Origin: Macrostomum lignano | Taxonomy: Eukaryota | Length of the DNA: 64,000 nucleotides | Assembly: GCA_002269645.1 (NCBI GenBank) | Contig: NIVC01002430.1 | Coordinates: 72,942 to 136,941, forward strand | Direction: 5' to 3' | Shown here: in pieces, positions 363 to 49,020 of the stretch | How positions within the stretch are numbered: the stretch's first letter is position 1 | Layout: each line of letters begins with the position of its first letter | Position numbers and translations under genes: made by a program | Notes under the pieces: generated by a model | What the model saw: the letters and a program-made list of their open reading frames with translations, nothing else | The model's database searches: none | What the model was told of the DNA's origin: nothing

Positions 363-380
363 TGCTTGGAATGGACCGCA

Positions 381-3300: not shown

Positions 3301-4680
3301 TGACAGGGGGAGCTGAAGGACTGGAGGGTGACGGGGGAGCTGAAGGAGTGGATGGTGACGGGGGAGATGCTGAAGGAGTGGATGGTGACAGGGGGACCTG
3401 AAGGACTGGAGGGTGACGGGGGAGCTGAAGGACTGGAGGGTGACGGGGGAGCTGAAGGAGTGGAGGGTGACGGGGGAGCTGAAGGAGTGGAGGGTGACGG
3501 GGGGAGCTGAAGGAGTGGAGGGTGACGGGGGGAGATGCTGAAGGAGTGGATGGTGACAGGGGGAGCTGAAGGACTGGAGGGTGACGGGGGAGCTGAAGGA
3601 CTGGAGGGTGACGGGGGGAGCTGAAGGACTGGAGGGTGACGGGGGGAGCTGAAGGACTGGAGGGTGACGGGGGAGCTGAAGGACTGGAGGGTGACGGGGG
3701 AGCTGAAGGAGTGGAGGGTGACGGGGGAGCTGAAGGAGTGGAGGGTGACGGGGGAGCTGAAGGAGTGGAGGGTGACGGGGGGAGCTGAAGGAGTGGAGGG
3801 TGACGGGGGGAGCTGAAGGAGTGGAGGGTGACGGGGGAGCTGAAGGAGTGGAGGGTGACGGGGGGAGCTGAAGGAGTGGAGGGTGACGGGGGGAGCTGAA
3901 GGAGTGGATGGTGACGGGGGGAGATGCTGAAGGAGTGGATGGTGACAGGGGGACCTGAAGGACTGGAGGGTGACGGGGGGAGCTGAAGGACTGGAGGGTG
4001 ACGGGGGAGCTGAAGGACTGGAGGGTGACGGGGGGAGCTGAAGGAGTGGAGGGTGACGGGGGGAGCTGAAGGAGTGGAGGGTGACGGGGGGAGCTGAAGG
4101 ACTGGAGGGTGACGGGGGGAGCTGAAGGACTGGAGGGTGACGGGGGGAGCTGAAGGACTGGAGGGTGACGGGGGAGCTGAAGGAGTGGAGGGTGACGGGG
4201 GGAGCTGAAGGACTGGAGGGTGACGGGGGGAGATGCTGAAGGAGTGGATGGTGACAGGGGAGCTGAAGGACTGGAGGGTGACGGGGGAGCTGAAGGAGTG
4301 AATGGTGACGGGGGAGATGCTGAAGGAGTGGATGGTGACAGGGGGACCTGAAGGACTGGAGGGTGACGGGGGGAGCTGAAGGACTGGAGGGTGACGGGGG
4401 AGCTGAAGGAGTGGAGGGTGACGGGGGAGCTGAAGGAGTGGAGGGTGACGGGGGGAGCTGAAGGAGTGGAGGGTGACGGGGGGAGCTGAAGGAGTGGAGG
4501 GTGACGGGGGAGATGCTGAAGGAGTGGATGGTGACAGGGGACCTGAAGGACTGGAGGGTGACGGGGGGAGCTGAAGGACTGGAGGGTGACGGGGGAGCTG
4601 AAGGACTGGAGGGTGACGGGGGAGCTGAAGGACTGGAGGGTGACGGGGGGAGATGCTGAAGGAGTGGAGGGTGACGGGTG
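381..4680 (+). repeat. G-rich minisatellite, 27-28 bp unit GGAGTGGAGGGTGACGGGGGGAGCTGAA, about 4.3 kb
   Basis: Directly visible tandem array with a few recurring variants (gactgg, gatggtgacag, gagatgctg). Confidence 0.97.
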
Positions 4681-5224: not shown

Positions 5225-6824
5225 ATGGGCGGCGGACACGAGCCTGAACCGACACGGGAGTCGCTCTACACCCCGGTGACTAGCAAGGCGTTCACTGACA
5301 CTTGGCTATTCAAAGCATTCGACTTGCCAACCACCTGGTTCAAGGAGAATGTGATTGACAAGTACAGGAAGAAATATCCCTATTATCACCGCCGATATCC
5401 TAGGGTGCCTACTATCGACCAGTGCTTTGTTGATGACGAGCTTTGCAATCTGGAGGCCGACGAGCAGTACAAAAGGGATCGGTGAGTTTTTACTGTTAAA
5501 TTAAAAAATAAGTTACATTTTCTTACTAACCTACTAACTAGTAAAAATGTCAAATAATTATCACTATTTTTGTGATATCGATGTGAAAATCTATACAATA
5601 GAACCATTTTCCCGATATGTAGCGTTGATATTTTCGAGACTGAAAATAGCTACTTTTTAATTACAAGTAAATTTTTACCTGTCCCCAACTAACCCAGCCT
5701 GGTTGACCAGGAGATTGTCAACATACTTCGTCGTCGGCGGGAACAGTGCTTCCAGTGGTACGGCAGGCAGCGCGACCTTATTGAGAAACACTGCGGCCAG
5801 ATTCAAAAGGATTATGATGAAGGTAATCTTCGCGATCGGAAGAAAATCTACGACGAGAGTGACCAGGTTAAAGGAACAGTGACAAGGGTTAGAATTAGAC
5901 TAGCTAGGCTCAGCGATCGAAAGAGTGACAAGGATAGCTATAGTGTGAATAGGAGAGTGTGACAAATAGTCATCTAGGAGAGTGACAAGTAGTCATCTAG
6001 GAGAGTGGCAAGTAGTCATCTAGGAGAGTGACAAGTAGCCATCTAGGAGAGTGACAAGTAGCCATCTAGGAGAGTGACAAGTAGCCATCTAGGAGAGTGA
6101 AAAGTGGCAATCTATGGGAGTGACAAGTAGTCATCTAGGAGAGTGACAAGTAGCCATCTAGGAGAGTGACAAGTAGTCATCTAGGAGAGTGACAAGTAGC
6201 CATCTAGGAGAGTGACAAGTAGTCATCTAGGAGAGGGACAAGTGGCCATCTAGGAGAGTGACAAGTAGCCATCTAGGAGAGTGACAAGTAGCCATCTAGG
6301 AGAGTGACAAGTAGTCATCTAGGAGAGGGACAAGTGGCCATCTAGGAGAGGGACAAGTAGCCATCTAGGAGAGTGAAAAGTGGCAATCTATGGGAGTGAC
6401 AAGTAGTCATCTAGGATAGTGACAAGTAGCCATCTAGGAGAGTTACAAGTAGTCATCTAGGAGAGGGACAAGTGGCCATCTAGGAGAGGGACAAGTAGCC
6501 ATCTAGGAGAGTGAAAAGTGGCAATCTATGGGAGTGACAAGTAGTTGAAACTCCCCTCCCACCCACGCAGCCTCCACCAACTACTTCATCAAGCACGGCG
6601 ACATGGGCTACGCGCACAACGTTAAGAACGCCCTGATGAAGCAGAAGCACCGGATGCTGTGGGAAAGAAAATACGGCGAAGTTGGCAGCCGAGGCGATCC
6701 AAACAAATATCCGAATGTGATTGATATGGAGCCTGGCACTCTGGAGCACGAGGACACTTTGATTGGCAACATGCGCAAATTCGGCAACAATCACGATCGA
6801 AATCCGAAAGAGATGGCGCCCTAA
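5225..6824 (+). CDS. NDUFB10: NADH:ubiquinone oxidoreductase subunit B10 (PDSW); join(5225..5481,5698..5822,6571..6824), 211 aa
   Basis: GT-AG introns join in frame. Motifs YPYYHRRYPRVPTIDQC, EADEQYKRDRLVDQEIVNIL and YFIKHGDMG..ALMKQKHRMLWER match NDUFB10. Confidence 0.93.
5950..6545 (+). repeat. 23-bp minisatellite GGAGAGTGACAAGTAGCCATCTA in NDUFB10 intron 2
   Basis: Visible tandem array. Confidence 0.95.
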
Positions 6825-7754: not shown

Positions 7755-9233
7755 ATGGAGCAACTAATGAAAATATTAGTAATTGGCGATCCAACAGTTG
7801 GTAAAACTTCGTTCGTTCATCGATATGTGAATAACATGTTTCAGACTGACTATAAGCAGACCATCGGGGTGGACTTTGCGCTTAAAGTTATTCGCTGGTC
7901 TGACACTCAAACTATTAAACTGCAGATGTGGGACATTGCCGGGCAGGAGAGGTGAGCACTGGCTGACTGACTGACTAACTGACTGACTGACTGACTGACG
8001 GACGGACTGACTGACTGACTGACTGACTGACTGACTGACTGACTGACTGACTGACTGACTGACTGACTGACTGACTGACTGACTGACTGACTGACTGACT
8101 AACCCACTGACTGACTGACTGACTGACTGACTGACTGACTGACTGACTGACTGACTGACTGACTGACTGACTGACTGACTGACTGACTGACTGACTGACT
8201 GACTGACTGACTGACTGACTGACTGACTGACTGACTGACTGACTGACTGACTGACTAACCCACTGACTGACTGACTGACTGACTGACTGACTGACTGACT
8301 GACTGACTGACTGACTGACTGACTGACTGACCCACTGACTGACTGACCCACTGACTGACCCACTGACTGACCCACTGACTGACTGACCCACTGACTGACT
8401 GACTGACTGGCCCACTTACCCACTGACTGACTGACCCACTGACCCACTGACTGACTGACCCACTGACTGACTGGCCCACTTACCCACTGACTGACTGACT
8501 GACTGGCCCACTTACCCACTGACTGACTGACTTGAGTGAGTGGGTGACTGACTGACTGACTGACCCACTGACTGACCCACTGACTGACTGACTTGAGTGA
8601 GTGGGTGACTGACTGACTGACTGACCCACTGACTGACTGACTTGAGTGAGTGGGTGACTGACTGACTGACTGACCCACTGACTGACCCACTGACTGACTG
8701 ACTGAGACACAGAGAAAGACACAGGCAGTCAGCCAACCCCCCACCCCTGCAGGTTCACCTCCATGACGCGAGTGTACTACAGAGACGCCCACGCAGCCGT
8801 AATCGTATTTGACTTAACCAAACGCTCAACATTTGACGGTGCGCTGAAATGGAAACGCGATTTGGACAGCAAATGCGCCCTGCCCGATGGCAGCCCGCTG
8901 CCGGCCATCCTGCTGGCTAATAAATGCGACTTGTTGAGCGGCGAGCGGCAGCTGCAACTGTCCGAGATTGAGACATTCTGCAGAGAGAACGGCTTCATTG
9001 GTTGGACAGAGGTCAGCGCCAAGGAGGGCGTCATGATTGAGGAGGCGATGCGATTTCTAATTGAATCGGTGCTAGCCAAGACTGCCAACTCTGAGTCAGC
9101 GGCTCAGACAGTCTCACTGACCGACGATCCGGCCATTGTCCGGCTGGGGGCGGTTAGCGGCGCGAAGAACAAGCCGCGGCGTGGTAACGTAGATGAGGAC
9201 GATGAAATCGGCGGCGGCAGATGTGCGTGCTAG
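7755..9233 (+). CDS. RAB29: Rab32/38/29-subfamily GTPase, RAB29(RAB7L1)-like; join(7755..7951,8753..9233), 225 aa
   Basis: GDPTVGKTS, GVDFALKVIRWSD, WDIAGQERFTSMTRVYY, NKCDL, C-terminal CAC prenylation motif. FTSMTR favours RAB29 over RAB32/38 (FGNMTR). Confidence 0.85.
7960..8705 (+). repeat. (GACT)n microsatellite filling the Rab intron
   Basis: Visible; interrupted by CCCACT and GAGTGAGTGGGT variants. Confidence 0.97.
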
Positions 9234-10880: not shown

Positions 10881-10914
10881 TCTGACTATTCGTGCCCACA
10901 GAGCAAATTTAGGC

Positions 10915-13900
10915 ATGTCTGCACTGGAACAACAGGCCGCTTTGGTCAACGCTCTTCCTTACGTTGACCGAGGCTTCGACGAGGCCGGCGTCAGAGAGGC
11001 CGCCCTCGCATGGTTGAAGAGGAGATGCGACGCTACCGGCCAACTAAAAACTATTTGGAACACCTGCCGCCATTGAATCTTCATCAGTTTGAGACCGATA
11101 TATTGCGGGCCGAATTTGAACGTTTAAGCAGTCGACAGCCGCCTGAGCACATGAGCATGAAGCGATACGAACTGCCAGCCCCGCCAACTGGCCGCCTGAC
11201 CGATGTGCAGAGCTGGCGAGACTCAGTTGACAACAGTCGAGCCCAGCTGGAGCACCAGAGTGTCCGCATTGAGAATCTGCAACTGCTGCTGGCTCACGGA
11301 TCCGATGCTTGGCGCTGTCACAACGACACTCTGGTGCGCATGGTTGCTGAGACTGAACGGCGTCTGCAGGCGACTCGGAAAGCAGTGAAGGAGGTTAATT
11401 TGCAGCGGAAGACTGAGCAGGTGCGTGCCGCATGCGTAGCATCCAGGACGACTTAAGTAGGAGGACATTCTACTTAAGTCGTCCTTGGTAGCATCTTGTG
11501 TAATTGAATGTAAAATCTAGTGTAATTGAATGTAAAATCTAGTGTAATTGAATGTAAAATCTAGTGTAATTGAATGTACTATCTAGTGTAATTGAATGTA
11601 CTATCTAGTGTAATTGAATGTACTATCTAGTGTAATTGAATGTACTATCTAGTGTAATTGAATGTACTATCTAGTGTAATTGAATGTACTATCTAGTGTA
11701 ATTGAATGTAATATCTAGTGTAATTGAATGTAATATCTAGTGTAATTGAATGTAATATCTAGTGTAATTGAATGTACTATCTAGTGTAATTGAATGTAAT
11801 ATCTAGTGTAATTGAATGTAATATCTAGTGTAATTGAATGTAATATCTAGTGTAATTGAATGTAATATCTAGTGTAATTGAATGTACTATCTAGTGTAAT
11901 TGAATGTAATATCTAGTGTAATTGAATGTAAAATCTAGTGTAATTGAATGTAATATCTAGTGTAATTGAATGTACTATCTAGTGTAATTGAATGTACTAT
12001 CTAGTGTAATTGAATGTAATATCTAGTGTAATTGAATGTAATATCTAGTGTAATTGAATGTAATATCTAGTGTAATTGAATGTAAAATCTAGTGTAATTG
12101 AATGTAATATCTAGTGTAATTGAATGTAAAATCTAGTGTAATTGAATGTAAAATCTAGTGTAATTGAATGTAAAATCTAGTGTAATTGAATGTAAAATCT
12201 AGTGTAATTGAATGTACTATCTAGTGTAATTGAATGTACTATCTAGTGTAATTGAATGTAAAATCTAGTGTAATTGAATGTAAAATCTAGTGTAATTGAA
12301 TGTACTATCTAGTGTAATTGAATGTACTATCTAGTGTAATTGAATGTACTATCTAGTGTAATTGAATGTAATATCTAGTGTAATTGAATGTAATATCTAG
12401 TGTAATTGAATGTAATATCTAGTGTAATTGAATGTAATATCTAGTGTAATTGAATGTAATATCTAGTGTAATTGAATGTAATATCTAGTGTAATTGAATG
12501 TACTATCTAGTGTAATTGAATGTACTATCTAGTGTAATTGAATGTACTATCTAGTGTAATTGAATGTACTATCTAGTGTAATTGAATGTAATATCTAGTG
12601 TAATTGAATGTAATATCTAGTGTAATTGAATGTAATATCTAGTGTAATTGAATGTAATATCTAGTGTAATTGAATGTAATATCTAGTGTAATTGAATGTA
12701 ATATCTAGTGTAATTGAATGTAAAATCTAGTGTAATTGAATGTAAAATCTAGTGTAATTGAATGTAAAATCTAGTGTAATTGAATGTAAAATCTAGTGTA
12801 ATTGAATGTAATATCTAGTGTAATTGAATGTAAAATCTAGTGTAATTGAATGTAATATCTAGTGTAATTGAATGTAAAATCTAGTGTAATTGAATGTAAA
12901 ATCTAGTGTAATTGAATGTAAAATCTAGTGTAATTGAATGTAAAATCTAGTGTAATTGAATGTACTATCTAGTGTAATTGAATGTACTATCTAGTGTAAT
13001 TGAATGTAAAATCTAGTGTAATTGAATGTAAAATCTAGTGTAATTGAATGTAATATCTAGTGTAATTGAATGTACTATCTAGTGTAATTGAATGTACTAT
13101 CTAGTGTAATTGAATGTAATATCTAGTGTAATTGAATGTAATATCTAGTGTAATTGAATGTAATATCTAGTGTAATTGAATGTAATATCTAGTGTAATTG
13201 AATGTAATATCTAGTGTAATTGAATGTAAAATCTAGTGTAATTGAATGTACTATCTAGTGTAATTGAATGTACTATCTAGTGTAATTGAATGTAATATCT
13301 AGTGTAATTGAATGTAATATCTAGTGTAATTGAATGTACTATCTAGTGTAATTGAATGTAATATCTAGTGTAATTGAATGTAATATCTAGTGTAATTGAA
13401 TGTAATATCTAGTGTAATTGAATGTAATATCTAGTGTAATTGAATGTAATATCTAGTGTAATTGAATGTACTATCTAGTGTAATTGAATGTAATATCTAG
13501 TGTAATTGAATGTACTATCTAGTGTAATTGAATGTAATATCTAGTGTAATTGAATGTACTATCTAGTGTAATTGAATGTAATATCTAGTGTAATTGAATG
13601 TAATATCTAGTGTAATTGAATGTAATATCTAGTGTAATTGAATGTACTATCTAGTGTAATTGAATGTAATATCTAGTGTAATTGAATGTAATATCTAGTG
13701 TAATTGAATGTACTATCTAGTGTAATTGAATGTAATATCTAGTGTAATTGAATGTAATATCTAGTGTAATTGAATGTAATATCTAGTGTAATTGAATGTA
13801 CTATCTAGTGTAATTGAATGTAATATCTAGTGTAATTGAATGTAATATCTAGTGTAATTGAATGTAATATCTAGTGTAATTGAATGTAATATCTAGTGTA

Positions 13901-14314
13901 ATTGAATGTAATATCTAGTGTAATTGAGTGTAGCATCTGGTGTGATTAAGTGTAGCACAACAATCCATCTATTTATTGCACCCTAGCTTTCCTTTAATTT
14001 ATCTAATTAATTAATTCAAGGTGCAAGCTGGCGAGCGGTTGCACACCCTCGAAGACACCTGGGTGCACCTGGTGATGAAGAACTACGAATTAGAGCGGGA
14101 AATCGCCGATTTAGAGACGGCCGTATCGAAAGCCGAGGCTGAGCGGCCTTTGCCGCAGACTGAGAAGTCAACCGAACCGGAAGCTGCACAGGTGGAAACT
14201 GCGGAAGCTGCGGAAGCTTCCGACGACAACGACGAACTGCCGCCGACGCCGCCAGCGCGTCAGTCGCCCGTGCCGACACCGCCGCCGGCGTCAGAGGAGC
14301 CTGCCGACGACTGA
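10915..14314 (+). CDS. BCAS2: Pre-mRNA splicing factor SPF27/BCAS2; join(10915..11420,14021..14314) with a 1-nt frameshift near 11009
   Basis: N-terminal ALPYVDRGFDEAGVREAAL, then in the shifted frame MVEEEMRRYRPTKNYL..MSMKRYELPAPP..EHQSVRIENLQLL; exon 2 AGERLHTLEDTWVHLVMKNYELE. Phase-0 GT-AG intron. Confidence 0.9.
11445..11485. other. Perfect 16-bp inverted repeat with 9-nt loop
   Basis: AGGACGACTTAAGTAG (11445-11460) and CTACTTAAGTCGTCCT (11470-11485). Confidence 0.9.
11499..13945 (+). repeat. 22-bp minisatellite TGTAATTGAATGTA(AA/CT/AT)ATCTAG, about 110 copies, BCAS2 intron
   Basis: Visible array with three dinucleotide variants. Confidence 0.97.
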
Positions 14315-14618
14315 CAGTTTTTTACTTGACATGACTTGACTTCGTAAATTGTACATGCAATTCTGTACTATGCTATGCTGTATTAATGTTTATAAAACCT
14401 TACTCTAATACTAATAAACACAAATTAATTGCGTCATCAAAAGCAAACAAAATTCTGTTTTTTTCTGGCTGCTGCATTTAATAATTAATTGGTTTAATTG
14501 TCTCATTTTTGTCGATAATTTTTCAACCACTTATTAGCTGGCGAGGCTTCAATTACTCCGGCCGTTTACCCGAAAAAATCTCTAATTTATGAAAACTCTA
14601 CTATTATTGAATTTGATA

Positions 14619-16973
14619 ATGGCATCGAAAGAGGCAGACGGTTCTGTTCGCTGCTTCTACGATATTCTTCAGGTGGATCGTCAGGCCAGTCAAGCTGAGA
14701 TTCGTACAGCTTATCACCGTCAGGCCCTGCGATGGCATCCGGATAAGCAACGGAATCGAGCCGATGCTGACAGTACTACTGCTGAGGATACTACTGATCA
14801 GTTTCAACAGATTCAACGAGCTTATGAAATACTTGGCGATCCTCGTACCAGAGCTCTGTATGATCAGCATAGAGAGGCCATACTGCGTCAGCGCGACACC
14901 CAGTGGGAGCCTGAGACCGATTCTACTAACCCGTTCAACTACTTCCCACCTGGTTGCTATAGCAACTATGGCGACGGCCCGGGCGGCTTCTTTGACGTCT
15001 ATGGCCGACTGTTTGACAAGTTGGCCGGCGAATTGAATTTGACTTTGCCTGGTGAGTCTTTTATTTGTCCGGGATTTTATAAGTTCCCAGGTCCCAATTT
15101 CTGCGGATTTCCTAATCCCGATTCTAAAAGAGTTCCTGGTCCCGATTCTATAACAGGTCCTAGTCCCGATTCTATAAGAGTTCCTAGTCCCGATTCTATG
15201 ATAGTTCCTAGTCCCGATTCTATAAGAGTTCCTGGTCCCGATTCTATAACAGGTCCTAGTCCCGATTCTATAAGAGTTCCTGGTCCCGATTCTAAAAGAG
15301 TTCCTGGTCCCGATTCTATAAAAGTTCCTGGTTCCGATTCTATAAGAGTTCCTAGTCCCGATTCTATGATAGTTCCTAGTCCCGATTCTATAAGAGTTCC
15401 TAGTCCCGATTCTATGATGGTTCCTAGTCCCGATTCTATAAGAGTTCCTGGTCCCGATTCTATAAAAGTTCTGGTTCCGATTCTATAAGAGTTCCTAGTC
15501 CCGATTCTATGATAGTTCCTAGTCCCGATTCTATAAGAGTTCCTAGTCCCGATTCTATGATGGTTCCTAGTCCCGATTCTATAAGAGTTCCTGGTCCCGA
15601 TTCTATAAGAGTTCCTAGTCCCGATTCTATAAGAGTTCCTAGTACCGATTCTATAAGAGTTCCTGGTCCCGATTCTATAAGAGTTCCTAGTCCCGATTCT
15701 ATGATAGTTCCTGGTTCCGATTCTATAAGAGTTCCTGGTCCCGATTCTATGATGGTTCCTAGTCCCGATTCTATAAGAGTTCCTAGTCCCGATTCTATGA
15801 TAGTTCCTAGTCCCGATTCTTTAAGAGTTCCTGGTCCCGATTCTATGATAGTTCCTGGTTCCGATTCTATAAGAGTTCCTAGTCCCGATTCTTTAAGAGT
15901 TCCTAGTCCCGATTCTATGATGGTTCCTAGTTCCTAGTACCGATTATAAGAGTTCCTGGTCCCGATTCTATGATGGTTCCTAGTCCCGATTCTATGATGG
16001 TTCCTAGTCCCGATTCTATAAGAGTTCCTAGTCCCGATTCTATAAGAGTTCCTGGTCCCGATTCTATAAAAGTTCCTGGTTCCGATTCTTTAAGAGTTCC
16101 TAGTCCCGATTCTTTACGAGTTCCTGGTCCCGATTCTATAAGAGTTCCTGGTCCCGATTCTATAAGAGTTCCTAGTCCCGATTCTATAAGAGTTCCTGGT
16201 CCCGATTCTATAAAAGTTCCTGGTTCCGATTCTTTAAGAGTTCCTAGTCCCGATTCTTTACGAGTTCCTAGTCCCTAAAATCCTTTTAAGTTTTAACAAA
16301 TCTCTAAGTTTTATCCCAAAACATTTGCGATATCCCTGGCCCTAATCCCACAGAATTCGGCAAATCGAACTCCGACTACAAGTCGGTAGTGGCCGAGTTC
16401 TACTCCGCCTGGGAGGCCAGCCTGACTCAGCTGAGCAGTCAGCAGCAGCAGCAGCATCGCCGCTGTGAAGAGCTTCGCGTATTGCTCGCCTTTGTCAAAG
16501 CCTGGGATCCCCGAGTGTTCAACTGGCGAGTGCAGGCGGCCTCCCAACTAATTACCGGCTTAGCGGAGGAGGAGGTTTTACAAGCGTCAGTTAGCCGGTC
16601 GGTTTTGGCCGGTTTGGCCGTCGGAGGCGGCGCTCTGCTAGGCGGCGCGTTGCTGCCTCGCGTCGGCAATTTCGGCCTGGCGCTTGGCGCTGCGTGCGCC
16701 GCCGTAGCCTACGCTGTTGCTAACCGAGGCGGCTTCGTGTCGCTGGCTGACGCCATTCGCTCGATGCCGCCCGAGAAGCGCACTCGTCTAGCCGAGCTCA
16801 CCGTAGACGCTATGCGCGATATGAACGCTATGGATTCGGCCACGTGGGCATCTCTGATAGCAACAGATGCTCAGTTTAGAGCCAGGCTGCTACAGTTGGC
16901 TAGGAGATTTGCTTACGGACAGCAAACGGCTGATGAGGCTAGGGAGGCTGAGCTACCCATTGGTACTCGTTGA
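14619..16973 (+). CDS. DNAJC21-derived J-domain protein fused to a C19orf12/Nazo-like C-terminal domain; join(14619..15051,16354..16973), 350 aa (alternative ATG 14589)
   Basis: J-domain with HPD; FFDVYGRLF..EFGKSNSDY..FYSAWE..LLAFVKAWDPRV parallels DNAJC21; then a Gly-rich hydrophobic segment and GGFVSLADAIRSMPPEKRTRL resembling C19orf12. Phase-1 GT-AG intron joins in frame. Confidence 0.8.
15110..16275 (+). repeat. 24-bp minisatellite CCCGATTCTATAAGAGTTCCTAGT in the intron
   Basis: Visible array; explains the PSPDSIRV ORFs. Confidence 0.96.
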
Positions 16974-17185
16974 TTAGAGATACAACTATTGTGCATTTTT
17001 AATATTCTGGTATATATTCCGAACTACATATAGTTCATTGATTTAGTGCTGATTAAGAATTTTTTATGCCATTGATTTCTCTTACAGACCCGTTAAATTT
17101 TAAATATATTTTCCTTAAAAATATGATTGAAATTTGTGTACTTATATTTTGGCGCTTGTTTTTGCCTGTGATTTGTCTGGTTTAA

Positions 17186-20130
17186 CCTGATGAAGGAAGC
17201 TGTAGGTTAGAGTGAGTAGCCTGATGAAGGAAGCTGAAGGTTAGAGTGGGTAGCCTGATGAAGGAAGCTGAAGGTTAGAGTGGGTAGCCTGATGAAGGAA
17301 GCTGAAGGTTAGAGTCGGTAGCCTGATGAAGGAAGCTGTAGGTTAGAGTGGGTAGCCTGATGAAGGAAGCTGAAGGTTAGAGTGGGTAGCCTGATGAAGG
17401 AAGCTGAAGGTTAGAGTCGGTAGCCTGATGAAGGAAGCTGAAGGTTAGAGTGGGTAGCCTGATGAAGGAAGCTGAAGGTTAGAGTGGGTAGCCTGATGAA
17501 GGAAGCTGAAGGTTAGAGTGGGTAGCCTGATGAAGGAAGCTGAAGGTTAGAGTGGGTAGCCTGATGAAGGAAGCTGAAGGTTAAAGTCGGTACCCTGATG
17601 AAGGAAGCTGAAGGTTAGATTCGGTAGCCTGATGAAGGAAGCTGCAGGTTAGAGTTGGTAGCCTGATGAAGGAAGCTGAAGGTTAGATTCGGTAGCCTGA
17701 TGAAGGAAGCTGCAGAGTCGGTAGCCTGATGAAGGAAGCTGAAGGTTAAAGTCGGTAGCCTGATGAAGGAAGCTGAAGGTTAAAGTCGGTAGCCTGATGA
17801 AGGAAGCTGAAGGTTAGAGTCGGTAGTCTGATGAAGGAAGCTGCAGGTTAGAGTCGGTAGCCTGATGAAGGAAGCTGAAGGTTAGATTCGGTAGCCTGAT
17901 GAAGGAAGCTGAAGGTTAGATTCGGTAGCCTGATGAAGGAAGCTGAAGGTTAGAGTCGGTAGCCTGATGAAGGAAGCTGAAGGTTAGAGTCGGTAGCCTG
18001 ATGAAGGAAGCTGAAGGTTAGAGTCGGTAGCCTGATGAAGGAAGCTGAAGGTTAGAGTGGGTAGCCTGATGAAGGAAGCTGAAGGTTAGAGTGGGTAGCC
18101 TGATGAAGGAAGCTGAAGGTTAGAGTGGGTAGCCTGATGAAGGAAGCTGAAGGTTAGAGTGGGTAGCCTGATGAAGGAAGCTGAAGGTTAGAGTGGGTAG
18201 CCTGATGAAGGAAGCTGAAGGTTAAAGTCGGTACCCTGATGAAGGAAGCTGAAGGTTAGATTCGGTAGCCTGATGAAGGAAGCTGCAGGTTAGAGTTGGT
18301 AGCCTGATGAAGGAAGCTGAAGGTTAGAGTCGGTAACCTGATGAAGGAAGCTGAAGGTTAGAGTCGGTAGCCTGATGAAGGAAGCTGAAGGTTAGAGTGG
18401 GTAGCCTGATGAAGGAAGCTGAAGGTTAGAGTGGGTAGCCTGATGAAGGAAGCTGAAGGTTAGAGTGGGTAGCCTGATGAAGGAAGCTGAAGGTTAGAGT
18501 GGGTAGCCTGATGAAGGAAGCTGAAGGTTAGAGTGGGTAGCCTGATGAAGGAAGCTGAAGGTTAGAGTGGGTAGCCTGATGAAGGAAGCTGAAGGTTAAA
18601 GTCGGTACCCTGATGAAGGAAGCTGAAGGTTAGATTCGGTAGCCTGATGAAGGAAGCTGCAGGTTAGAGTTGGTAGCCTGATGAAGGAAGCTGAAGGTTA
18701 GAGTCGGTACCCTGATGAAGGAAGCTGAAGGTTAGATTCGGTAGCCTGATGAAGGAAGCTGCAGGTTAGAGTCGGTAGCCTGATGAAGGAAGCTGAAGGT
18801 TAGAGTCGGTAACCTGATGAAGGAAGCTGAAGGTTAGAGTCGGTAGCCTGATGAAGGAAGCTGAAGGTTAGATTCGGTAGCCTGATGAAGGAAGCTGCAG
18901 AGTCGGTAGCCTGATGAAGGAAGCTGAAGGTTAAAGTCGGTAGCCTGATGAAGGAAGCTGAAGGTTAAAGTCGGTAGCCTGATGAAGGAAGCTGAAGGTT
19001 AGAGTCGGTAGTCTGATGAAGGAAGCTGCAGGTTAGAGTCGGTAGCCTGATGAAGGAAGCTGAAGGTTAGATTCGGTAGCCTGATGAAGGAAGCTGAAGG
19101 TTAGATTCGGTAGCCTGATGAAGGAAGCTGAAGGTTAGAGTCGGTAGCCTGATGAAGGAAGCTGAAGGTTAGAGTCGGTAGCCTGATGAAGGAAGCTGAA
19201 GGTTAGAGTCGGTAGCCTGATGAAGGAAGCTGAAGGTTAGAGTGGGTAGCCTGATGAAGGAAGCTGAAGGTTAGAGTGGGTAGCCTGATGAAGGAAGCTG
19301 AAGGTTAGAGTGGGTAGCCTGATGAAGGAAGCTGAAGGTTAGAGTGGGTAGCCTGATGAAGGAAGCTGAAGGTTAGAGTGGGTAGCCTGATGAAGGAAGC
19401 TGAAGGTTAAAGTCGGTACCCTGATGAAGGAAGCTGAAGGTTAGATTCGGTAGCCTGATGAAGGAAGCTGCAGGTTAGAGTTGGTAGCCTGATGAAGGAA
19501 GCTGAAGGTTAGAGTCGGTAACCTGATGAAGGAAGCTGAAGGTTAGAGTCGGTAGCCTGATGAAGGAAGCTGAAGGTTAGATTCGGTAGCCTGATGAAGG
19601 AAGCTGCAGAGTCGGTAGCCTGATGAAGGAAGCTGAAGGTTAAAGTCGGTAGCCTGATGAAGGAAGCTGAAGGTTAAAGTCGGTAGCCTGATGAAGGAAG
19701 CTGCAGAGTCGGTAGCCTGATGAAGGAAGCTGAAGGTTAAAGTCGGTAGCCTGATGAAGAAAGCTGAAGGTTAAAGTCGGTAGCCTGATGAAGGAAGCTG
19801 AAGGTTAGAGTCGGTAGCCTGATGAAGGAAGCTGAAGGTTAGAGTCGGTAGCCTGATGAAGGAAGCTGAAGGTTAGATTCGGTAGCCTGATGAAGGAAGC
19901 TGAAGGTTAGATTCGGTAGCCTGATGAAGGAAGCTGAAGGTTAGAGTCGGTAGCCTGATGAAGGAAGCTGCAGGTTAGAGTCGGTAGCCTGATGAAGGAA
20001 GCTGAAGGTTAGAGTCGGTAGCCTGATGAAGGAAGCTGAAGGTTAAAGTCGGTAGCCTGATAAAGGAAGCTGAAGGTTAGATTCGGAAGTCTTAGGAAGG
20101 TTTTAGTTGGTAGCTTGATGAAGGAAGCTG
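17186..20130 (+). repeat. 34-bp minisatellite CCTGATGAAGGAAGCTGAAGGTTAGAGTCGGTAG, about 85 copies
   Basis: Visible array between the two DnaJ genes, with recurring ordered variant blocks. Confidence 0.97.
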
Positions 20131-20186
20131 AATTATGGATTATCTTCATATCTCAACGCACTGTTCTTGATGCGGCAGCGGCCTCG

Positions 20187-23049
20187 ATGACCTCAGTCGA
20201 ACAGCAGCACCAGAGAGCCGGCGGAGTCCGCTGCTACTACGAACTGCTGGAGGTGGAGCGCCAGGCCACCGACGATGAGCTGAAGAAGGCCTACAGGCGG
20301 CTGGCGCTTCGCTGGCATCCGGACAAGAACCCGGACAGGGTGGAGGAGGCCACCGCCCACTTCCGGCTGGTGCAGAAGGCCTACGAGACGCTGTCCGATC
20401 CGCAGGAGCGGGCCTGGTACGACAAGCACCGCGAGCGGATCTTGAAAGGCGGCCTTGGCCGCGGCGACGCCTATCAGGAGGAGCGTCTGGACGTCTTCCA
20501 GTTCTTCACCTCCGCCTGCTACGACGACTACGACGACGGCGAGGAAGGCTACTTCACTGTGTACGCCCGGGTGTTCAGCGATCTGGCCGAGGAGGAGCGG
20601 CGGGCCTGCGACGGAGACGACGAACCGCCGCCTGACTTTCCAGGTTGGTGGCTGTTGATGGCTAACCAGGTGTCACCGTTGACCTTCCAGATCCTCAGCT
20701 GCTGGGCCAGCCTCCCAGATCCTCAGTTGCTGGGCCAGCCTCCCAGATCCTCAGCTGCTGGGCCAGCCTCCCAGATCCTCAGCTGCTGGGCCAGCCTCCC
20801 AGATCCCGAGTTGCTGGGCCAGCCTCCCAGATCCCGAGTTGCTGGCCAGCCTCCCAGATCCTCAGTTGCTGGGCCAGCCTCCCAGATCTTTAGTTGCTGG
20901 GCCAGCCTCCCAGATCCTCAGCTGCTGGGCCAGCCTCCCAGATCCCCAGTTGCTGGGCCAGCCTCCCAGATCCTCAGTTGCTGGGCCAGCCTCCCAGATC
21001 CTCAGCTGCTGGGCCAGCCTCCCAGATCCCCAGTTGCTGGGCCAGCCTCCCAGATCCTCAGTTGCTGGGCCAGCCTCCCAGATCCTCAGTTGCTGGGCCA
21101 GCCTCCCAGATCCTCAGCTGCTGGGCCAGCCTCCCAGATCCTCAGCTGCTGGGCCAGCCTCCCAGATCCTCAGCTGCTGGGCCAGCCTCCCAGATCCTCA
21201 GCTGCTGGGCCAGCCTCCCAGATCCCCAGTTGCCGCACCCCCAAGTCCATGCAGCATGGGATTAGCTAGGATCCATAAGCACTATTATCGCATTCAACTC
21301 CCCTGTCATTCCGCACAGAGTTTGGCCGCTCCGACTCCCCATACGACACGGTGGTCAGGCCGTTCTACGCGCACTGGGAGACCTTCTTCACGCGCAAGTC
21401 CTACGTGTGGGTGGAGAAATACGACACCAGGGAGGCGCCAAACAAGTACGCCAGGAAGGCCATGGAGAAGGAGAATCGCGCAGCCAGAGACGCCGCCCGT
21501 CGAGAGCGCAACGAAGAGATTCGAACTCTGGTTGCTTTCGTTAAAAAGCGCGATCCTCGGGTGCGCGCCGAACGGCGCCGATTAGAGGCGCGCGCGCGCG
21601 AAGTCGAAGCCAAAGCGAAAGCGATGGCCTCGGCGGCTAGGAAGGCCCACCTGGAGACCGCCAGCCGGTACAGGGCGCCCGACTGGGCCAGGACTGACGA
21701 CCTCGAGGCCGAGCTGGCCAAGATCGAAGCCGAGCACGGGGCCGGCGCCTCCGATCTAGACGATGACGGAGACTGGGAGGATCAGGAAGATGGCGGCGAA
21801 GAAGGCGCTGGGGTGATCAATGGAGCTGTAGGTGCTGCCGAGTGTGATGAAGCTGAGGAAGCGGATGAGGATGATGCTGAGGATGCGCTGGTGTGCGTTG
21901 TTTGCGAGAAGGTGAGCTCAAAGTCTGAAGTTTTCCTTATGGCTAATGACTTTCTCGATCAGCTCTGACTCTTTCTCGATCAGCTCTGGCTCTTTTTCGA
22001 TCAGCTCTGACTCTTTCTCAATCAGCTCTGACTCTTTCTTGATCAGCTCTGACTCTTTCTTGATCAGCTCTGACTCTTTTTCGATCAGCTCTGACTCTTT
22101 CTTGATCAGCTCTGACTCTTTCTCAATCAGCTCTGACTCTTTCTCAATCAGCTCTGACTCTTTCTCGATCAGCTCTGACTCTTTCTTGATAAGCTCTGAC
22201 TCTTTCTCGATCAGCTCTGACTCTTTCTTGATCAGCTCTGACTCTTTCTCGATCAGCTCTGACTCTTTCTCGATCAGCTCTGACTCTTTCTTGATCAGCT
22301 CTGACTCTTCCTCGATTGTTTCTGACTCTATCAATCGACTCTGTCTGACCCTGACAGTCCCACTTTCTCTGACTCTCTGATGACGCAACGCCGCCCTCTG
22401 CATCGCTGCATCCAGCCACCCCTCCTCACCATCGCAGGCATTCCGCACCCCAGGCGCCAAGCAGAGCCACGATCGATCCAAGCGGCACAGAGAGCGACTC
22501 GAGCTGCTCAAACTTGAGTTAGCAAAGCACGATGCCCAGCCAGTAGAAAAAGATCCAGCAGCAGCAGACAATGACTCTTTAGACAATGATGAAGACGTAC
22601 AGCTGGAAGCGGAAGTCCAGCAGGTCTCTGGCGGCAAGAAAAAGAAGAGCAAAAGAAAGCAACAGCAGCGCCAGCAGCTACAGGCTCAGCTAGGAGAAAA
22701 TGAGGAACCATCAGATAATCCAAATGCAAATTCTGCGGCAGCAAAACCAGCGGAAGATGCTGCGGAAGCTTCCGATGATGAAGCGGCGGCAGCAGCAACG
22801 CCGGAAACTTCAAAGAAGCCGCGCCGACGGAAGGATCGCCAACGGCAGAAGCAGCAGGAGCTGCTTGAACAGAAACGTCAGGAACAGTTGGAAGAGGAGG
22901 CTGACGGGACCACCCAAGTGTGCAAAACCTGCAGGCAGTGGTTCGATTCTAAGAATCAGCTGTTCAAGCATTTGAAGGAGAGCGGCCACGCCGCTATCAA
23001 GCCTGGGGCGGCGGCCGGACGGACTGACAAGAAATCGAAGCGAAAGTAG
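20187..23049 (+). CDS. DNAJC21: DnaJ homolog subfamily C member 21 (Jjj1/Zuo-related); join(20187..20643,21319..21911,22438..23049), 553 aa
   Basis: J-domain (RWHPDKNP), EFGRSDSPY..FYAHW..KSYVW, coiled coil, C2H2 finger across the exon 2/3 junction (CVVCEK|AFRT..HDRSKRH), second finger CKTCRQWFDSKNQLFKHLKESGH. Confidence 0.93.
20680..21235 (+). repeat. 28-bp minisatellite GGGCCAGCCTCCCAGATCCTCAGTTGCT in DNAJC21 intron 1
   Basis: Visible; same unit recurs at 55.8 kb and 57.6-58.0 kb. Confidence 0.95.
21948..22315 (+). repeat. 21-bp minisatellite TTCTCGATCAGCTCTGACTCT in DNAJC21 intron 2
   Basis: Visible array. Confidence 0.95.
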
Positions 23050-23211: not shown

Positions 23212-24320
23212 ACCTTAGTGACAATAGACAAGACTGTCACACAGCACGGTCACCTTGGTGACCATAGACAAGACTGTCACACAGCACGGTCACTTTGGTG
23301 ACCATAGACAAGACTGTCACACAGCACGGTCACTTTGGTGACCATAGACAAGACTGTCACACAGCACGTTCACCTTGGTGACCATAGACAGGACTGTCAC
23401 ACAGCACGTTCACCTTGGTGACCATAGACAAGACTGTCACACAGCACGTTCACCTTGGTGACCATAGACAGGACTGTCACACAGCACGGTCACCTTGGTG
23501 ACCATAGACAAGACTGTCACACAGCACGGTCACCTTGGTAACCATAGACAAGACTGTCACACAGCACGGTCACCTTGGTGACCATAGACAAGACTGTCAC
23601 TCAGCACGGTCACCTTGGTGACCATAGACAAGACTGTCACACAGCACGGTCACCTTGGTAACCAAAGACAAGACTGTCACACAGCACGTTCACCTTGGTG
23701 ACCATAGACAAGACTGTCACACAGCACGTTCACCTTGGTGACCCTAGACAAGACTGTCACACAGCACGGTCACCTTGGTGACCATAGACAAGACTGTCAC
23801 ACAGCACGGTCACCTTGGTGACCATAGACAAGACTGTCACACAGCACGGTCACCTTGGTAACCATAGACAAGACTGTCACACAGCACGGTCACCTTGGTG
23901 ACCATAGACAAGACTGTCACTCAGCACGGTCACCTTGGTGACCATAGACAAGACTGTCACACAGCACGGTCACCTTGGTAACCAAAGACAAGACTGTCAC
24001 ACAGCACGTTCACCTTGGTGACCATAGACAAGACTGTCACACAGCACGTTCACCTTGGTGACCCTAGACAAGACTGTCACACAGCACGGTCACCTTGGTG
24101 ACCATAGACAAGACTGTCACACAGCACGGTCACCTTGGTGACCATAGACAAGACTGTCACACAGCACGGTCACCTTGGTGACCATAGACAAGACTGTCAC
24201 ACAGCACGTTCACTTTGGTGACCCTAGACAAGACTGTCACACAGCACGGTCACCTTGGTGACCATAGACAAGACTGTCACACAGCACGGTCACCTTGGTG
24301 ACCCTAGACAAGTCTGTTAC
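23212..24320 (+). repeat. 40-bp minisatellite ACCATAGACAAGACTGTCACACAGCACGGTCACCTTGGTG with an internal palindrome
   Basis: Visible array, about 27 copies, no spacers. Confidence 0.96.

Positions 24321-28267: not shown

Positions 28268-49020
<20,753 letters not shown>

What the first reader, a model, noticed from the sequence alone, without database searches (positions are those of the whole stretch)
14619..16973. Chimeric gene: DNAJC21-type J-domain fused to a C19orf12/Nazo-like membrane protein
Seen: after the DNAJC21-like FVKAWDPRV (ends 16517) the same exon continues SQLITGLAEEEVLQASVSRS-[Gly-rich hydrophobic]-GGFVSLADAIRSMPPEKRTRL..MDSATWASLIATDAQFRARLLQL. By eye this aligns with human C19orf12 as I recall it (KLLCSLSGERKMKAAVKHS-[Gly-rich][44 protein letters not shown]). 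Established: C19orf12 is a mitochondria/ER membrane protein mutated in MPAN, and its fly homologue Nazo is linked to lipid homeostasis and antiviral defence. Inference: a new membrane-anchored Hsp70 co-chaperone with intact HPD; I know of no described J-domain + C19orf12 fusion.
Basis: partly seen in the sequence, partly recalled or inferred. Interest (0 to 1): 0.8.

Follow-up and report, generated by a model that had tools for sequence, protein, structure and literature searches.

The report
Flatworm J-domain fused to C19orf12
A flatworm (Macrostomum lignano) gene really does join an Hsp70-recruiting J-domain, copied from its neighbour DNAJC21, to a complete copy of the membrane protein C19orf12; no other case of this combination turned up, and it hints that this poorly understood disease-linked protein may work with chaperones.

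Summary
Window 14619-16973 (+) is a two-exon gene (GT..AG intron 15052-16353) encoding 350 aa. It matches GenBank PAA57946.1 of Macrostomum lignano, whose gene models were built from RNA-seq.

- **N-terminal part:** an intact J-domain (Pfam DnaJ 1.4e-20, HPD present) followed by a worn-down zuotin-homology region.
- **C-terminal part:** 151 aa that are truly C19orf12. Pfam's own model scores below its cut-off (24 bits against 30). An exhaustive phmmer of 1.84 billion proteins gave about 40 end-to-end hits of 137-143 aa (best E 2e-11), and all of them are PF20721 members. An independent family HMM gives 58 bits, and none of 500 shuffles comes near.

New here: both parent genes are neighbours.
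- A full DNAJC21 (J + ZHD + zinc fingers) lies 3.2 kb downstream. Its first intron has the same position and phase as the fusion's intron.
- An intronless stand-alone C19orf12 lies 17 kb upstream on the same strand.

So this is a locally born chimeric gene, also present in a second genomic copy. It is strongly diverged, yet the reading frame and 9 of 11 family-conserved residues are kept.

Most likely function (inferred, not shown): a hairpin-anchored J-protein that faces the cytosol and recruits Hsp70 to ER, mitochondrial or lipid-droplet membranes. No other J + C19orf12 protein appeared in limited surveys. Interest is moderate.

The parts
14619..15051 (+). Exon 1 of the fusion gene (residues 1-144 plus the first base of codon 145). 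The GenBank partial CDS begins 27 nt upstream at 14592, and an in-frame ATG lies at 14589.
   Evidence: Donor is CTG|GTGAGT. ATG 14619 has A at -3 and G at +4. The N-terminus (DGSVRCFYDILQV) parallels that of the neighbouring DNAJC21 (GGVRCYYELLEV).
14655..14864 (+). J-domain (residues 13-82), with HPD at 14736-14744. The loop between helices II and III is 7 aa longer than usual.
   Evidence: Pfam DnaJ 73.6 bits, E 1.4e-20. PDB J-domains down to E 4e-12. The AlphaFold J-domain has pLDDT 80-92 and Foldseek matches J-domains only.
15052..16353 (+). The single intron (phase 1, GT..AG). It is filled by a 24-bp minisatellite (15109-16275, 48.5 copies). The second genomic copy has the same intron with fewer repeats (611 bp).
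   Evidence: Position and phase are identical to intron 1 of the neighbouring DNAJC21, 20644-21318.
16354..16532 (+). 5' part of exon 2: a DNAJC21-derived remnant of the zuotin-homology domain (EFGKSNSDYKSVVAEFYSAWEA...LRVLLAFVKAWDPRVFNWRV). About 25 residues are deleted relative to DNAJC21.
   Evidence: BLASTP against a DNAJC21-type protein P0003 and against the neighbouring gene. PF21884 reaches only 15.7 bits, profile 2-44 of 105. No PDB hit, whereas the neighbour's equivalent region hits the Zuotin ZHD 5dje.
16533..16913 (+). C19orf12-like module, collinear with a whole 140-aa C19orf12 protein from about its residue 2-6 to near its end.
16599..16724 (+). Glycine-zipper hydrophobic hairpin (residues 227-268): SVLAGLAVGGGALLGGALL - PRVGN - FGLALGAACAAVAYAVA.
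   Evidence: Hydropathy peaks of 1.85 and 1.69. AlphaFold gives two adjoining helices with pLDDT about 75-81. Family-invariant Gly residues are kept.
16914..16973 (+). Short acidic C-terminal tail and stop codon (TGA 16971-16973). The second copy carries a 12-bp in-frame insertion here.
20175..23049 (+). Parent gene 1: canonical DNAJC21/JJJ1-type gene (557 aa; J-domain, ZUO1-like ZHD, C2H2 zinc fingers), 3.2 kb downstream. Exon 1 is 20187-20643 and exon 2 starts at 21319.
   Evidence: One search gives gene calls and Pfam (L003 coordinate + 4591 = window coordinate).
11010..14314 (+). Upstream neighbour BCAS2/SPF27. It ends 278 bp before the annotated start of the fusion gene and gives context for a possible shared transcription unit.

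Best explanation
**What it is.** This is a real, transcribed, lineage-restricted chimeric gene of the flatworm Macrostomum lignano.

**How it arose.** It was assembled at the DNA level from two genes of its own neighbourhood.
- One piece is a tandem copy of the 5' part of DNAJC21: exon 1, intron 1 and the start of exon 2. This gives the J-domain plus the beginning of the zuotin-homology domain.
- That piece was joined in frame, inside exon 2, to an almost complete copy of an intronless C19orf12 gene that had lost only its start codon.

**What it encodes.** The product has four parts:
1. an intact J-domain;
2. a degenerate helical linker that has lost the ribosome-binding ZHD core and the zinc fingers of DNAJC21;
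3. the C19orf12 glycine-zipper hydrophobic hairpin;
4. the C19orf12 soluble helical domain.

**How it most likely works (inferred).**
- The hairpin inserts into the cytosolic face of the membranes where C19orf12 proteins reside: ER/MAM, mitochondrial outer membrane and lipid droplets.
- Both ends, and so the J-domain, stay in the cytosol.
- There the HPD motif stimulates ATP hydrolysis by cytosolic Hsp70/Hsc70. This concentrates chaperone activity on clients or partners bound by the C19orf12 domain.
- It may also pair with the stand-alone C19orf12 through the glycine zippers.

**How sure.**
- Gene structure, homology of both halves and synteny with both parents are shown (about 0.95).
- Origin by local duplication is inferred (about 0.75).
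- Membrane anchoring, cytosolic orientation and Hsp70 recruitment are inferred (about 0.5).
For: - **Gene model:** correct splice signals and a closed 350-aa frame. The product is identical to GenBank PAA57946.1, whose annotation derives from RNA-seq-guided transcript assembly (PMC5730564).
- **Not an assembly artefact:** a second copy on contig NIVC01003107.1 has the same structure. It differs by 5 synonymous changes, 6 non-synonymous changes and two in-frame indels.
- **J-domain:** Pfam 1.4e-20 with HPD.
- **C19orf12 homology:**
  - exhaustive phmmer gives 45 hits at E<1e-3, best 2e-11, aligned end to end with 137-143-aa proteins;
  - all 39 aligned hits are PF20721 members and the fusion's own C-terminal part also matches that model, with several hits named C19orf12 homolog;
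  - an independent HMM gives 58.5 bits, split 23.3 (N-helix plus hairpin) and 21.1 (soluble part), with 0 of 500 shuffles reaching it;
  - 9 of 11 invariant or near-invariant family columns are kept.
- **Parent 1:** DNAJC21 lies 3.2 kb downstream. It is 38-45% identical to the N-part and has the same phase-1 intron inside the Glu codon before FG(K/R)S.
- **Parent 2:** an intronless stand-alone C19orf12 lies on the same strand, 17.3 kb upstream on this contig and 13 kb upstream on the second contig.
- **Constraint:** the frame stayed open after divergence to about 33-38% identity from both parents. Between the two copies pN is 0.0063, against 3.3% mismatches in flanking non-coding DNA (Fisher p 4e-4) and pS of 0.020.
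- **Hairpin:** predicted by hydropathy and AlphaFold.
- **Topology and location of C19orf12 proteins:** hairpin topology with both termini cytosolic, and ER / mitochondrial outer membrane / MAM / lipid-droplet localisation, are reported in PMC12384588.
Against: - **No direct functional data:** nothing on protein, localisation or Hsp70 interaction.
- **Diverged C19orf12 part:**
  - It misses Pfam's gathering score (24.1 against 30).
  - It is far more diverged than the stand-alone paralogue (58 against 127 bits; mean distance 2.05 against 1.49).
  - It has lost the near-invariant Pro of GPxGL, changed one conserved Gly to Ala, and carries a PRV insertion with an Arg in the hairpin turn. Membrane behaviour could therefore differ.
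- **Weak selection test:** dN/dS between the two copies alone is not significant (0.32, p 0.067).
- **Origin not resolved by phylogeny:** the fusion domain groups with the M. lignano stand-alone gene in only 3 of 200 bootstraps. An older origin or a different paralogous source is possible.
- **Start codon uncertain:** the GenBank CDS is 5'-partial and starts 27 nt upstream. An in-frame ATG at 14589 would add MKTLLLLNLI, a short hydrophobic N-terminus that could change targeting.
- **Topology disputed:** C19orf12 topology itself is debated, hairpin against single pass (PMC12384588).
- **Fusion seen in one species only.**
Confidence: 0.6

Rival explanations
1. Transcribed but functionless by-product. 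On this reading the gene is a chimeric partial duplicate, thrown up by the highly repetitive and recently duplicated M. lignano genome, that is drifting towards pseudogenisation.
For: - Both halves are much more diverged than their parents: 58 against 127 bits for the C19orf12 part.
- The ZHD is eroded by a deletion of about 25 aa.
- Two near-invariant family residues are lost.
- dN/dS between the two copies is not significantly below 1.
- No orthologue was found outside M. lignano.
Against: - A 1053-nt frame stayed open, with correct splice sites, after divergence to about 35% identity from both parents. Neutral decay would have broken it.
- HPD, the J-domain core, the glycine zipper and 9 of 11 conserved C19orf12 columns are kept.
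- Both indels between the two copies are in frame.
- Non-synonymous divergence is five times lower than flanking non-coding divergence (p 4e-4).
Confidence: 0.15
2. A lumenal J-protein. Translation would start at the upstream ATG (14589) or at the ATG supplied by the spliced leader. MKTLLLLNLIMA would then act as a signal peptide, so the J-domain would face the ER lumen and work with BiP, as ERdj proteins do.
For: - The GenBank CDS is open from 14592 and an in-frame ATG sits at 14589.
- The hydrophobic extension is kept in the second copy, KSLLLLNLIMA.
- The M. lignano spliced leader ends in ATG (PMC8629364).
Against: - The hydrophobic core is only about 8-9 residues and is interrupted by Asn.
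- ATG 14589 has a poor context (T at -3), while ATG 14619 has A at -3 and G at +4.
- No AG acceptor precedes 14592.
- The N-terminus from 14619 matches the length and sequence of the N-terminus of DNAJC21, a cytosolic protein.
- C19orf12 termini are reported to be cytosolic (PMC12384588).
Confidence: 0.1
3. A modulator of the stand-alone C19orf12 rather than an Hsp70 recruiter for clients. The diverged hairpin would pair with C19orf12 through the glycine zippers and alter its oligomerisation or stability, with the J-domain mainly controlling turnover. A related alternative is that the protein still acts in 60S ribosome maturation like DNAJC21.
For: - Glycine-zipper positions, proposed to drive helix packing or multimerisation (PMC12384588), are conserved.
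- The two genes lie in the same 17-kb neighbourhood on the same strand.
Against: - No interaction data exist.
- For the ribosome role, the ZHD core is deleted and the zinc fingers are absent.
- An intact DNAJC21 remains next door.
Confidence: 0.1
4. An annotation or assembly artefact: two separate genes merged by the transcript assembler or by misassembly.
For: UniProt models from an earlier annotation (A0A1I8FLB6, A0A1I8F438) are frameshifted chimeras that merge BCAS2, this gene and DNAJC21. M. lignano also has polycistronic transcription units (PMC5730564).
Against: - The DNAJC21-like and C19orf12-like parts are contiguous in one exon and one frame, with no stop and no internal ATG.
- The same arrangement occurs on two independently assembled contigs that differ by point changes.
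Confidence: 0.02

Closest known systems
C19orf12 / Drosophila Nazo (CG11671) family, Pfam PF20721
   Same: The C-terminal 151 aa are collinear with a whole family member. They share the N-terminal amphipathic helix (LAEEE..L.V.V), the glycine-zipper hydrophobic hairpin, and the soluble helical domain with the F, L and D positions conserved.
   Different: - Family members found here are stand-alone proteins of about 140 aa. The only other architecture seen was a tandem double in a tunicate.
- This copy has no start codon of its own and sits behind 200 aa of J-protein.
- It is much more diverged and below Pfam's gathering score.
- It has N instead of the GPxGL proline, a PRV insert in the hairpin turn and an extra acidic tail.
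DNAJC21 / yeast Jjj1 (cytosolic J-protein of 60S ribosome maturation)
   Same: The J-domain and the post-J segment (FNYF..CY..YGDGP.GFF.VY..LF..L; FGKS.S.Y..V..FY..WE; L..FVK..DPRV) are homologous. The first intron is at the identical position and phase, and the gene lies directly upstream of the true DNAJC21.
   Different: The ZHD core is deleted (about 25 aa) and scores below threshold. There are no C2H2 zinc fingers and no charged C-terminal region. A membrane hairpin is present instead.
Membrane-tethered, cytosol-facing J-proteins (DNAJB12/DNAJB14, yeast Hlj1; conceptually also DNAJC5/CSP and Pam18/DNAJC19)
   Same: Shared working principle (from general knowledge of J-proteins): a J-domain held at an organelle membrane recruits Hsp70 locally.
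   Different: The non-J parts are unrelated. Here the anchor is a C19orf12 glycine-zipper hairpin rather than a single transmembrane span, tail anchor or lipid anchor. The orientation has not been tested.
New chimeric genes born by partial tandem duplication and fusion (for example Drosophila jingwei; Oryza fusion genes, PMC9199173)
   Same: Mode of origin: pieces of neighbouring genes were joined into one frame and then evolved faster than their parents.
   Different: The components differ. Here both parent genes are still intact, within 3 and 17 kb.

Membership tests
J-domain proteins (Pfam PF00226, Hsp40 class C) | J-domain profile match above the curated threshold | tested here: met
   73.6 bits against a cut-off of 27.8, E 1.4e-20, residues 13-82. 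PDB J-domains down to E 4e-12. Foldseek hits are J-domains only.
J-domain proteins (Pfam PF00226, Hsp40 class C) | HPD tripeptide between helices II and III | tested here: met
   RWHPDK, residues 40-42, window 14736-14744. Kept in the second copy.
J-domain proteins (Pfam PF00226, Hsp40 class C) | Stimulates Hsp70 ATPase | not testable with these tools
   Needs a biochemical assay.
C19orf12-like (Pfam PF20721) | Profile match above Pfam's gathering score | tested here: not met
   24.1-24.7 bits against a cut-off of 30. E is 2-3.5e-5, covering profile 19-132 of 163.
C19orf12-like (Pfam PF20721) | Reciprocal sequence homology: the best database relatives are family members, aligned end to end | tested here: met
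   Exhaustive phmmer gives a best E of 2e-11, with query 6-135 aligned to residues 6-132 of 137-143-aa proteins. All 39 aligned relatives hit PF20721. An independent HMM gives 58.5 bits with 0 of 500 shuffles reaching it.
C19orf12-like (Pfam PF20721) | Glycine-zipper hydrophobic hairpin followed by a soluble helical domain | tested here: met
   Two hydrophobic segments, 227-245 and 251-268. AlphaFold gives a helix-turn-helix followed by 4 helices. Of 11 conserved columns, 9 are kept, with P51 changed to N and G61 changed to A.
C19orf12-like (Pfam PF20721) | Association with ER, mitochondrial or lipid-droplet membranes | not testable with these tools
   Needs tagging and fractionation.
DNAJC21 / Jjj1 | N-terminal J-domain with the DNAJC21-type post-J segment | tested here: met
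   34% identity over 247 aa to a J+ZHD protein. 38% over 233 aa to the neighbouring DNAJC21. Shared intron position and phase.
DNAJC21 / Jjj1 | Zuotin-homology domain (PF21884) | tested here: not met
   15.7 bits against a cut-off of 25.1, covering only profile 2-44 of 105. Deletion of about 25 aa. No PDB hit, whereas the neighbour hits the Zuotin ZHD.
DNAJC21 / Jjj1 | C-terminal C2H2 zinc fingers | tested here: not met
   Absent: the sequence after DPRV is C19orf12-like. The neighbouring gene has them.

The most novel reading that the evidence does not exclude
A 'Rosetta-stone' reading. On this view the fusion hard-wires a partnership that exists in trans elsewhere: C19orf12/Nazo proteins in general would work with cytosolic Hsp70 and a J-protein at ER, mitochondrial or lipid-droplet surfaces. 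That would give a concrete biochemical handle on the unknown function of the gene mutated in the human disorder MPAN. A weaker variant is that the flatworm evolved a new organelle-surface chaperone system built on a C19orf12 anchor.
Probability: 0.12. Interest if true: 0.8.

Novelty: new variant of a known kind. Interest (0 to 1): 0.5.

Why it matters
C19orf12 is an orphan protein. Mutations cause the human neurodegenerative disorder MPAN, and the fly homologue Nazo controls triglyceride stores, yet its molecular activity is unknown (PMC12384588, PMC10883546).

A natural, apparently constrained fusion of a whole C19orf12 to an intact Hsp70-recruiting J-domain gives a testable hypothesis: C19orf12 may mark membrane sites where Hsp70 acts. 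It also offers a ready-made tool, since the hairpin serves as a membrane anchor.

Separately, the locus is an unusually clear example of how a new gene is born. Both parents are still intact within 20 kb, the inherited intron is preserved, the join point maps to a few codons, and both halves show accelerated divergence.

The limits are real. The fusion is seen in one species, there are no functional data, and class C J-proteins are known for acquiring almost any partner domain.

Tried and rejected
- **Word-indexed homologue searches** with the post-J region and with the N-terminal 208 aa found only the gene itself and one DNAJC21-type fragment. So no orthologues at 50-90% identity are in that collection, and the age of the fusion could not be bracketed.
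- **Phylogeny** of the C19orf12 domain (NJ, Kimura distances, 76 sequences, 139 columns, 200 bootstraps):
  - The fusion is a long branch. It joins the M. lignano stand-alone gene in only 3 of 200 replicates, although that gene is its nearest neighbour by raw distance. The origin rests on synteny, not on the tree.
  - A first attempt with Biopython timed out.
- **dN/dS between the two genomic copies:** only 11 substitutions, a ratio of 0.32 and p 0.067. This is suggestive only. The comparison with flanking DNA is stronger but assumes the flanks are neutral.
- **Foldseek of the AlphaFold model against PDB** returned only J-domains, so there is no structural clue for the C19orf12 part. PDB sequence search of the middle region found nothing.
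- **Two long 'hits' from the exhaustive search** (P0008 of 3256 aa, P0033 of 2078 aa) are repeat-protein false positives, for example plectin repeats.
- **P0004 and P0032** are frameshifted UniProt chimeras of three neighbouring M. lignano genes, not independent fusions.
- **Independent expression of the C19orf12 part via spliced-leader trans-splicing onto exon 2** was rejected. The leader's ATG would be out of frame and would meet a stop after 12 codons (sequence, SL).
- **Literature searches** for C19orf12 with J-domain, for PF20721 and for Mlig015190 found nothing relevant.
Full report
**1. What is in the sequence**

The window is from the flatworm Macrostomum lignano (assembly GCA_002269645.1, contig NIVC01002430.1; window position 1 is about record position 72942). 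At 14619-16973 (+) there is a two-exon gene:
- Exon 1 is 14619-15051, with donor CTG|GTGAGT.
- The intron is 15052-16353.
- Exon 2 is 16354-16973, with acceptor CCCACAG|AA and stop TGA at 16971.

The intron is phase 1, and the spliced CDS is 1053 nt, or 350 aa.

The spliced product is 100% identical to GenBank PAA57946.1 ('hypothetical protein BOX15_Mlig015190g4, partial'). GenBank models for this assembly were derived from a genome-guided RNA-seq transcriptome (StringTie/TACO/TBONE/TransDecoder; PMC5730564). The 15051/16354 junction therefore has indirect transcript support.

A second genomic copy sits on contig NIVC01003107.1 (PAA53278.1). It has the same splice sites and differs by 5 synonymous changes, 6 non-synonymous changes and two in-frame indels (-3 and +12 nt). 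Its intron is shorter because it holds fewer copies of the 24-bp minisatellite. Two independently assembled copies rule out misassembly.

**2. The N-terminal half**

Residues 13-82 are a J-domain (Pfam DnaJ 73.6 bits, E 1.4e-20) with HPD at residues 40-42. PDB J-domains match down to E 4e-12.

The next 120 or so residues align with DNAJC21/Jjj1-type proteins:
- 34% identity over 247 aa to a J + ZUO1-like-ZHD protein (P0003).
- 38% identity over 233 aa to the gene immediately downstream.

That downstream gene (window 20175-23049, 557 aa) has the full DNAJC21 architecture of J-domain, ZHD and C2H2 zinc fingers. Its post-J region hits the crystal structure of the Zuotin ZHD (5dje).

Its first intron (20644-21318) interrupts a Glu codon after its first base, just before FGRSDSPY. 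In the fusion gene the intron interrupts a Glu codon after its first base, just before FGKSNSDY. Identical intron position and phase, plus adjacency, show that the N-part is a DNA-level tandem partial duplicate of DNAJC21.

It is not a functional DNAJC21, for three reasons:
- About 25 residues of the ZHD core are deleted.
- PF21884 scores 15.7 bits against a cut-off of 25.1, and there is no PDB hit.
- The zinc fingers are missing.

**3. The C-terminal half**

- **Pfam's C19orf12 model.** It matches at E 3.5e-5 but at 24.1 bits, below the gathering score of 30. Taken alone this is only suggestive, because Gly/Ala-rich membrane segments can inflate scores.
- **Exhaustive phmmer.** The last 151 aa (window:16518-16970) were searched against 1.84 billion representative proteins.
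  - This returned 45 proteins at E<1e-3, with a best foreign hit of 2e-11.
  - About 40 of them are 137-143-aa proteins aligned from their residue 6-10 to residue 122-135.
  - All 39 of these that were aligned match PF20721 (best E 5.8e-33).
  - The named ones are 'protein C19orf12 homolog' of spiders.
- **Control for composition and selection bias.** I built an HMM from 32 other, mostly arthropod, family members.
  - The fusion's C-part scores 58.5 bits (E 4e-20 for one comparison).
  - The N-helix plus hairpin gives 23.3 bits and the soluble domain alone gives 21.1 bits.
  - None of 500 shuffles exceeds 8.2 bits.
- **Conserved positions.** Of 11 invariant or near-invariant family columns, 9 are kept.
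  - The exceptions are the Pro of GPxGL (now Asn) and one Gly (now Ala).
  - A three-residue PRV insertion sits in the hairpin turn.
- **Structure.** Hydropathy and an AlphaFold model (mean pLDDT 72) give two adjoining hydrophobic helices followed by a small helical domain.
- **Join point.** The alignment register shows that essentially a whole C19orf12 ORF, minus its start codon, was joined a few codons after DNAJC21's '...FVK..DPRV'.

**4. Where the C19orf12 piece came from**

M. lignano has a normal stand-alone C19orf12 (142 aa, single exon; PAA57941.1 and PAA53273.1). It lies on the same contigs and the same strand, 17.3 kb upstream of the fusion here (2.7 kb before the window starts) and 13 kb upstream on the second contig.

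The gene order is: C19orf12, an unknown gene of about 510 aa, NDUFB10, an Arf/Ras-like GTPase, BCAS2, the FUSION, DNAJC21.

So both parents flank the chimera. However, the fusion's C-part is only 33% identical to that stand-alone gene, no closer than to a spider homologue (34%). It is a long branch (mean distance 2.05 against 1.49), and a bootstrap NJ tree does not place it (3 of 200). Local duplication followed by fast divergence is the most economical reading, but it rests on synteny, not phylogeny.

**5. Is it functional?**

*Arguments for function:*
- A 350-codon frame with correct splice sites has survived divergence to about 35% identity from both parents.
- The catalytic HPD and the J-domain core, the glycine zipper and the conserved soluble-domain residues are all kept.
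- The indels between the two copies are in frame.
- Non-synonymous divergence between the copies (0.63%) is about five-fold below flanking non-coding divergence (3.3%; p 4e-4) and below synonymous divergence (2.0%; ratio 0.32, p 0.067).

*Arguments against:*
- There are no protein-level data.
- Conservation in both halves is relaxed.
- The gene is found in one species only.

**6. Most likely mechanism (inferred)**

C19orf12 proteins are described as hydrophobic-hairpin proteins with both termini in the cytosol. They are found on the mitochondrial outer membrane, ER/MAM and lipid droplets, although the topology is debated (PMC12384588).

With Met at 14619 there is no signal or transit peptide. 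The start resembles that of cytosolic DNAJC21, and this ATG has the better context. The protein would then be a cytosol-facing J-protein anchored by a hairpin. It would recruit and activate Hsc70 at C19orf12-type membranes. The former ZHD would serve as a helical spacer, and the C19orf12 soluble domain or glycine zipper would provide partner or client binding, possibly including the stand-alone C19orf12.

This works like DNAJB12/14 or Hlj1, but with an unrelated anchor.

One unresolved point could invert the topology. The GenBank CDS is open from 14592, and an in-frame ATG at 14589 would add a short hydrophobic N-terminus (MKTLLLLNLI). The M. lignano spliced leader ends in ATG, but there is no AG acceptor here. 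I rate this alternative at about 10%.

**7. Novelty**

- No J-domain protein appeared among the 45 hits of the exhaustive search or the 47 hits of a family-profile search. All of the profile-search hits are single-domain proteins of 75-184 aa.
- The only other multi-domain family member seen was a tandem C19orf12 double in a tunicate.
- Full-text searches found no paper linking C19orf12 to a J-domain fusion, and none mentioning PF20721 or this gene.
- These surveys are limited, and a complete domain-architecture census was not possible.
- In databases the protein is a 'hypothetical' or 'J domain-containing' protein, and its C19orf12 part is invisible to Pfam thresholds.

I class it as a new variant of a known kind: a class C J-protein with a previously unreported partner domain, born by local gene fusion.

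**8. Verdict**

- It is sharpened as to origin: both parents are neighbours, the intron is shared, and the DNAJC21 functions are lost.
- It remains untested as to function.
- Interest is 0.5. This is a clear case of new-gene birth and a suggestive, but single-species, link between an orphan disease protein and the Hsp70 system.

Noticed in passing
window 380-4678, 11493-13954, 15109-16275, 17186-20100, 20683-21233, 21950-22316, 23212-24317, 37197-41147, 60834-62797 and others: The window is saturated with minisatellites. There are 37 TRF rows with score >=400, units of 18-46 bp plus about 4 kb of (ACAG)n. Almost every intron and intergenic spacer of the BCAS2, fusion and DNAJC21 genes holds its own, different array. 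Copy number differs between the two genomic copies (fusion intron 1302 against 611 bp).
   Followed up: partly
window 14589-15488 (also 15509-15937, 15970-16278): The 24-bp intron repeat is a multiple of three and stays open in frame with exon 1. Read-through of the donor would add about 145 codons of (V/I)P(S/G)PDSI(R/K)-type octapeptide repeats to the J-domain before a stop. An intron-retaining transcript would therefore encode a J-domain-repeat protein. No evidence that this happens.
   Followed up: no
window 14560-14620: The GenBank CDS is 5'-partial from 14592. An in-frame ATG at 14589 would add MKTLLLLNLI. The bases just upstream (CTCTAATTTATG) loosely resemble the 3' end of the M. lignano spliced leader (..CTCAATTTATTGCATG), but no AG acceptor is present. 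The true 5' end and start codon are unresolved.
   Followed up: partly
window 42065-47317 (+): An uninterrupted 1750-aa ORF with endonuclease/exonuclease/phosphatase, reverse transcriptase and RNase H domains. It is an apparently intact non-LTR (LINE-like) retrotransposon ORF2.
   Followed up: partly
UniProt A0A1I8FLB6 (P0004) and A0A1I8F438 (P0032), mapping to window about 10900-23046: Older M. lignano gene models are frameshifted chimeras that string together BCAS2, the fusion gene (partly in the wrong frame) and DNAJC21. They surface as spurious 'hits' in homology searches.
   Followed up: yes
contig NIVC01000043.1 (L004 3001-3429): A third genomic copy of the stand-alone C19orf12 and its downstream neighbour exists. 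No third annotated copy of the fusion protein is in the 90% cluster. Whether that region carries the fusion was not checked.
   Followed up: no
P0006 (Clavelina lepadiformis XP_076809569.1, 285 aa): A tunicate protein made of two tandem C19orf12 modules. It was the only other multi-domain architecture of the family met in these searches.
   Followed up: partly
window 5225-6824, 7755-9233, 53356-54300 (-), 57611-58888 (-): Other genes in the window: NDUFB10, an Arf/Ras-family small GTPase, an ORF with a ribosomal L9 N-terminal domain, and an ORF with a proteasome/cyclosome repeat.
   Followed up: no
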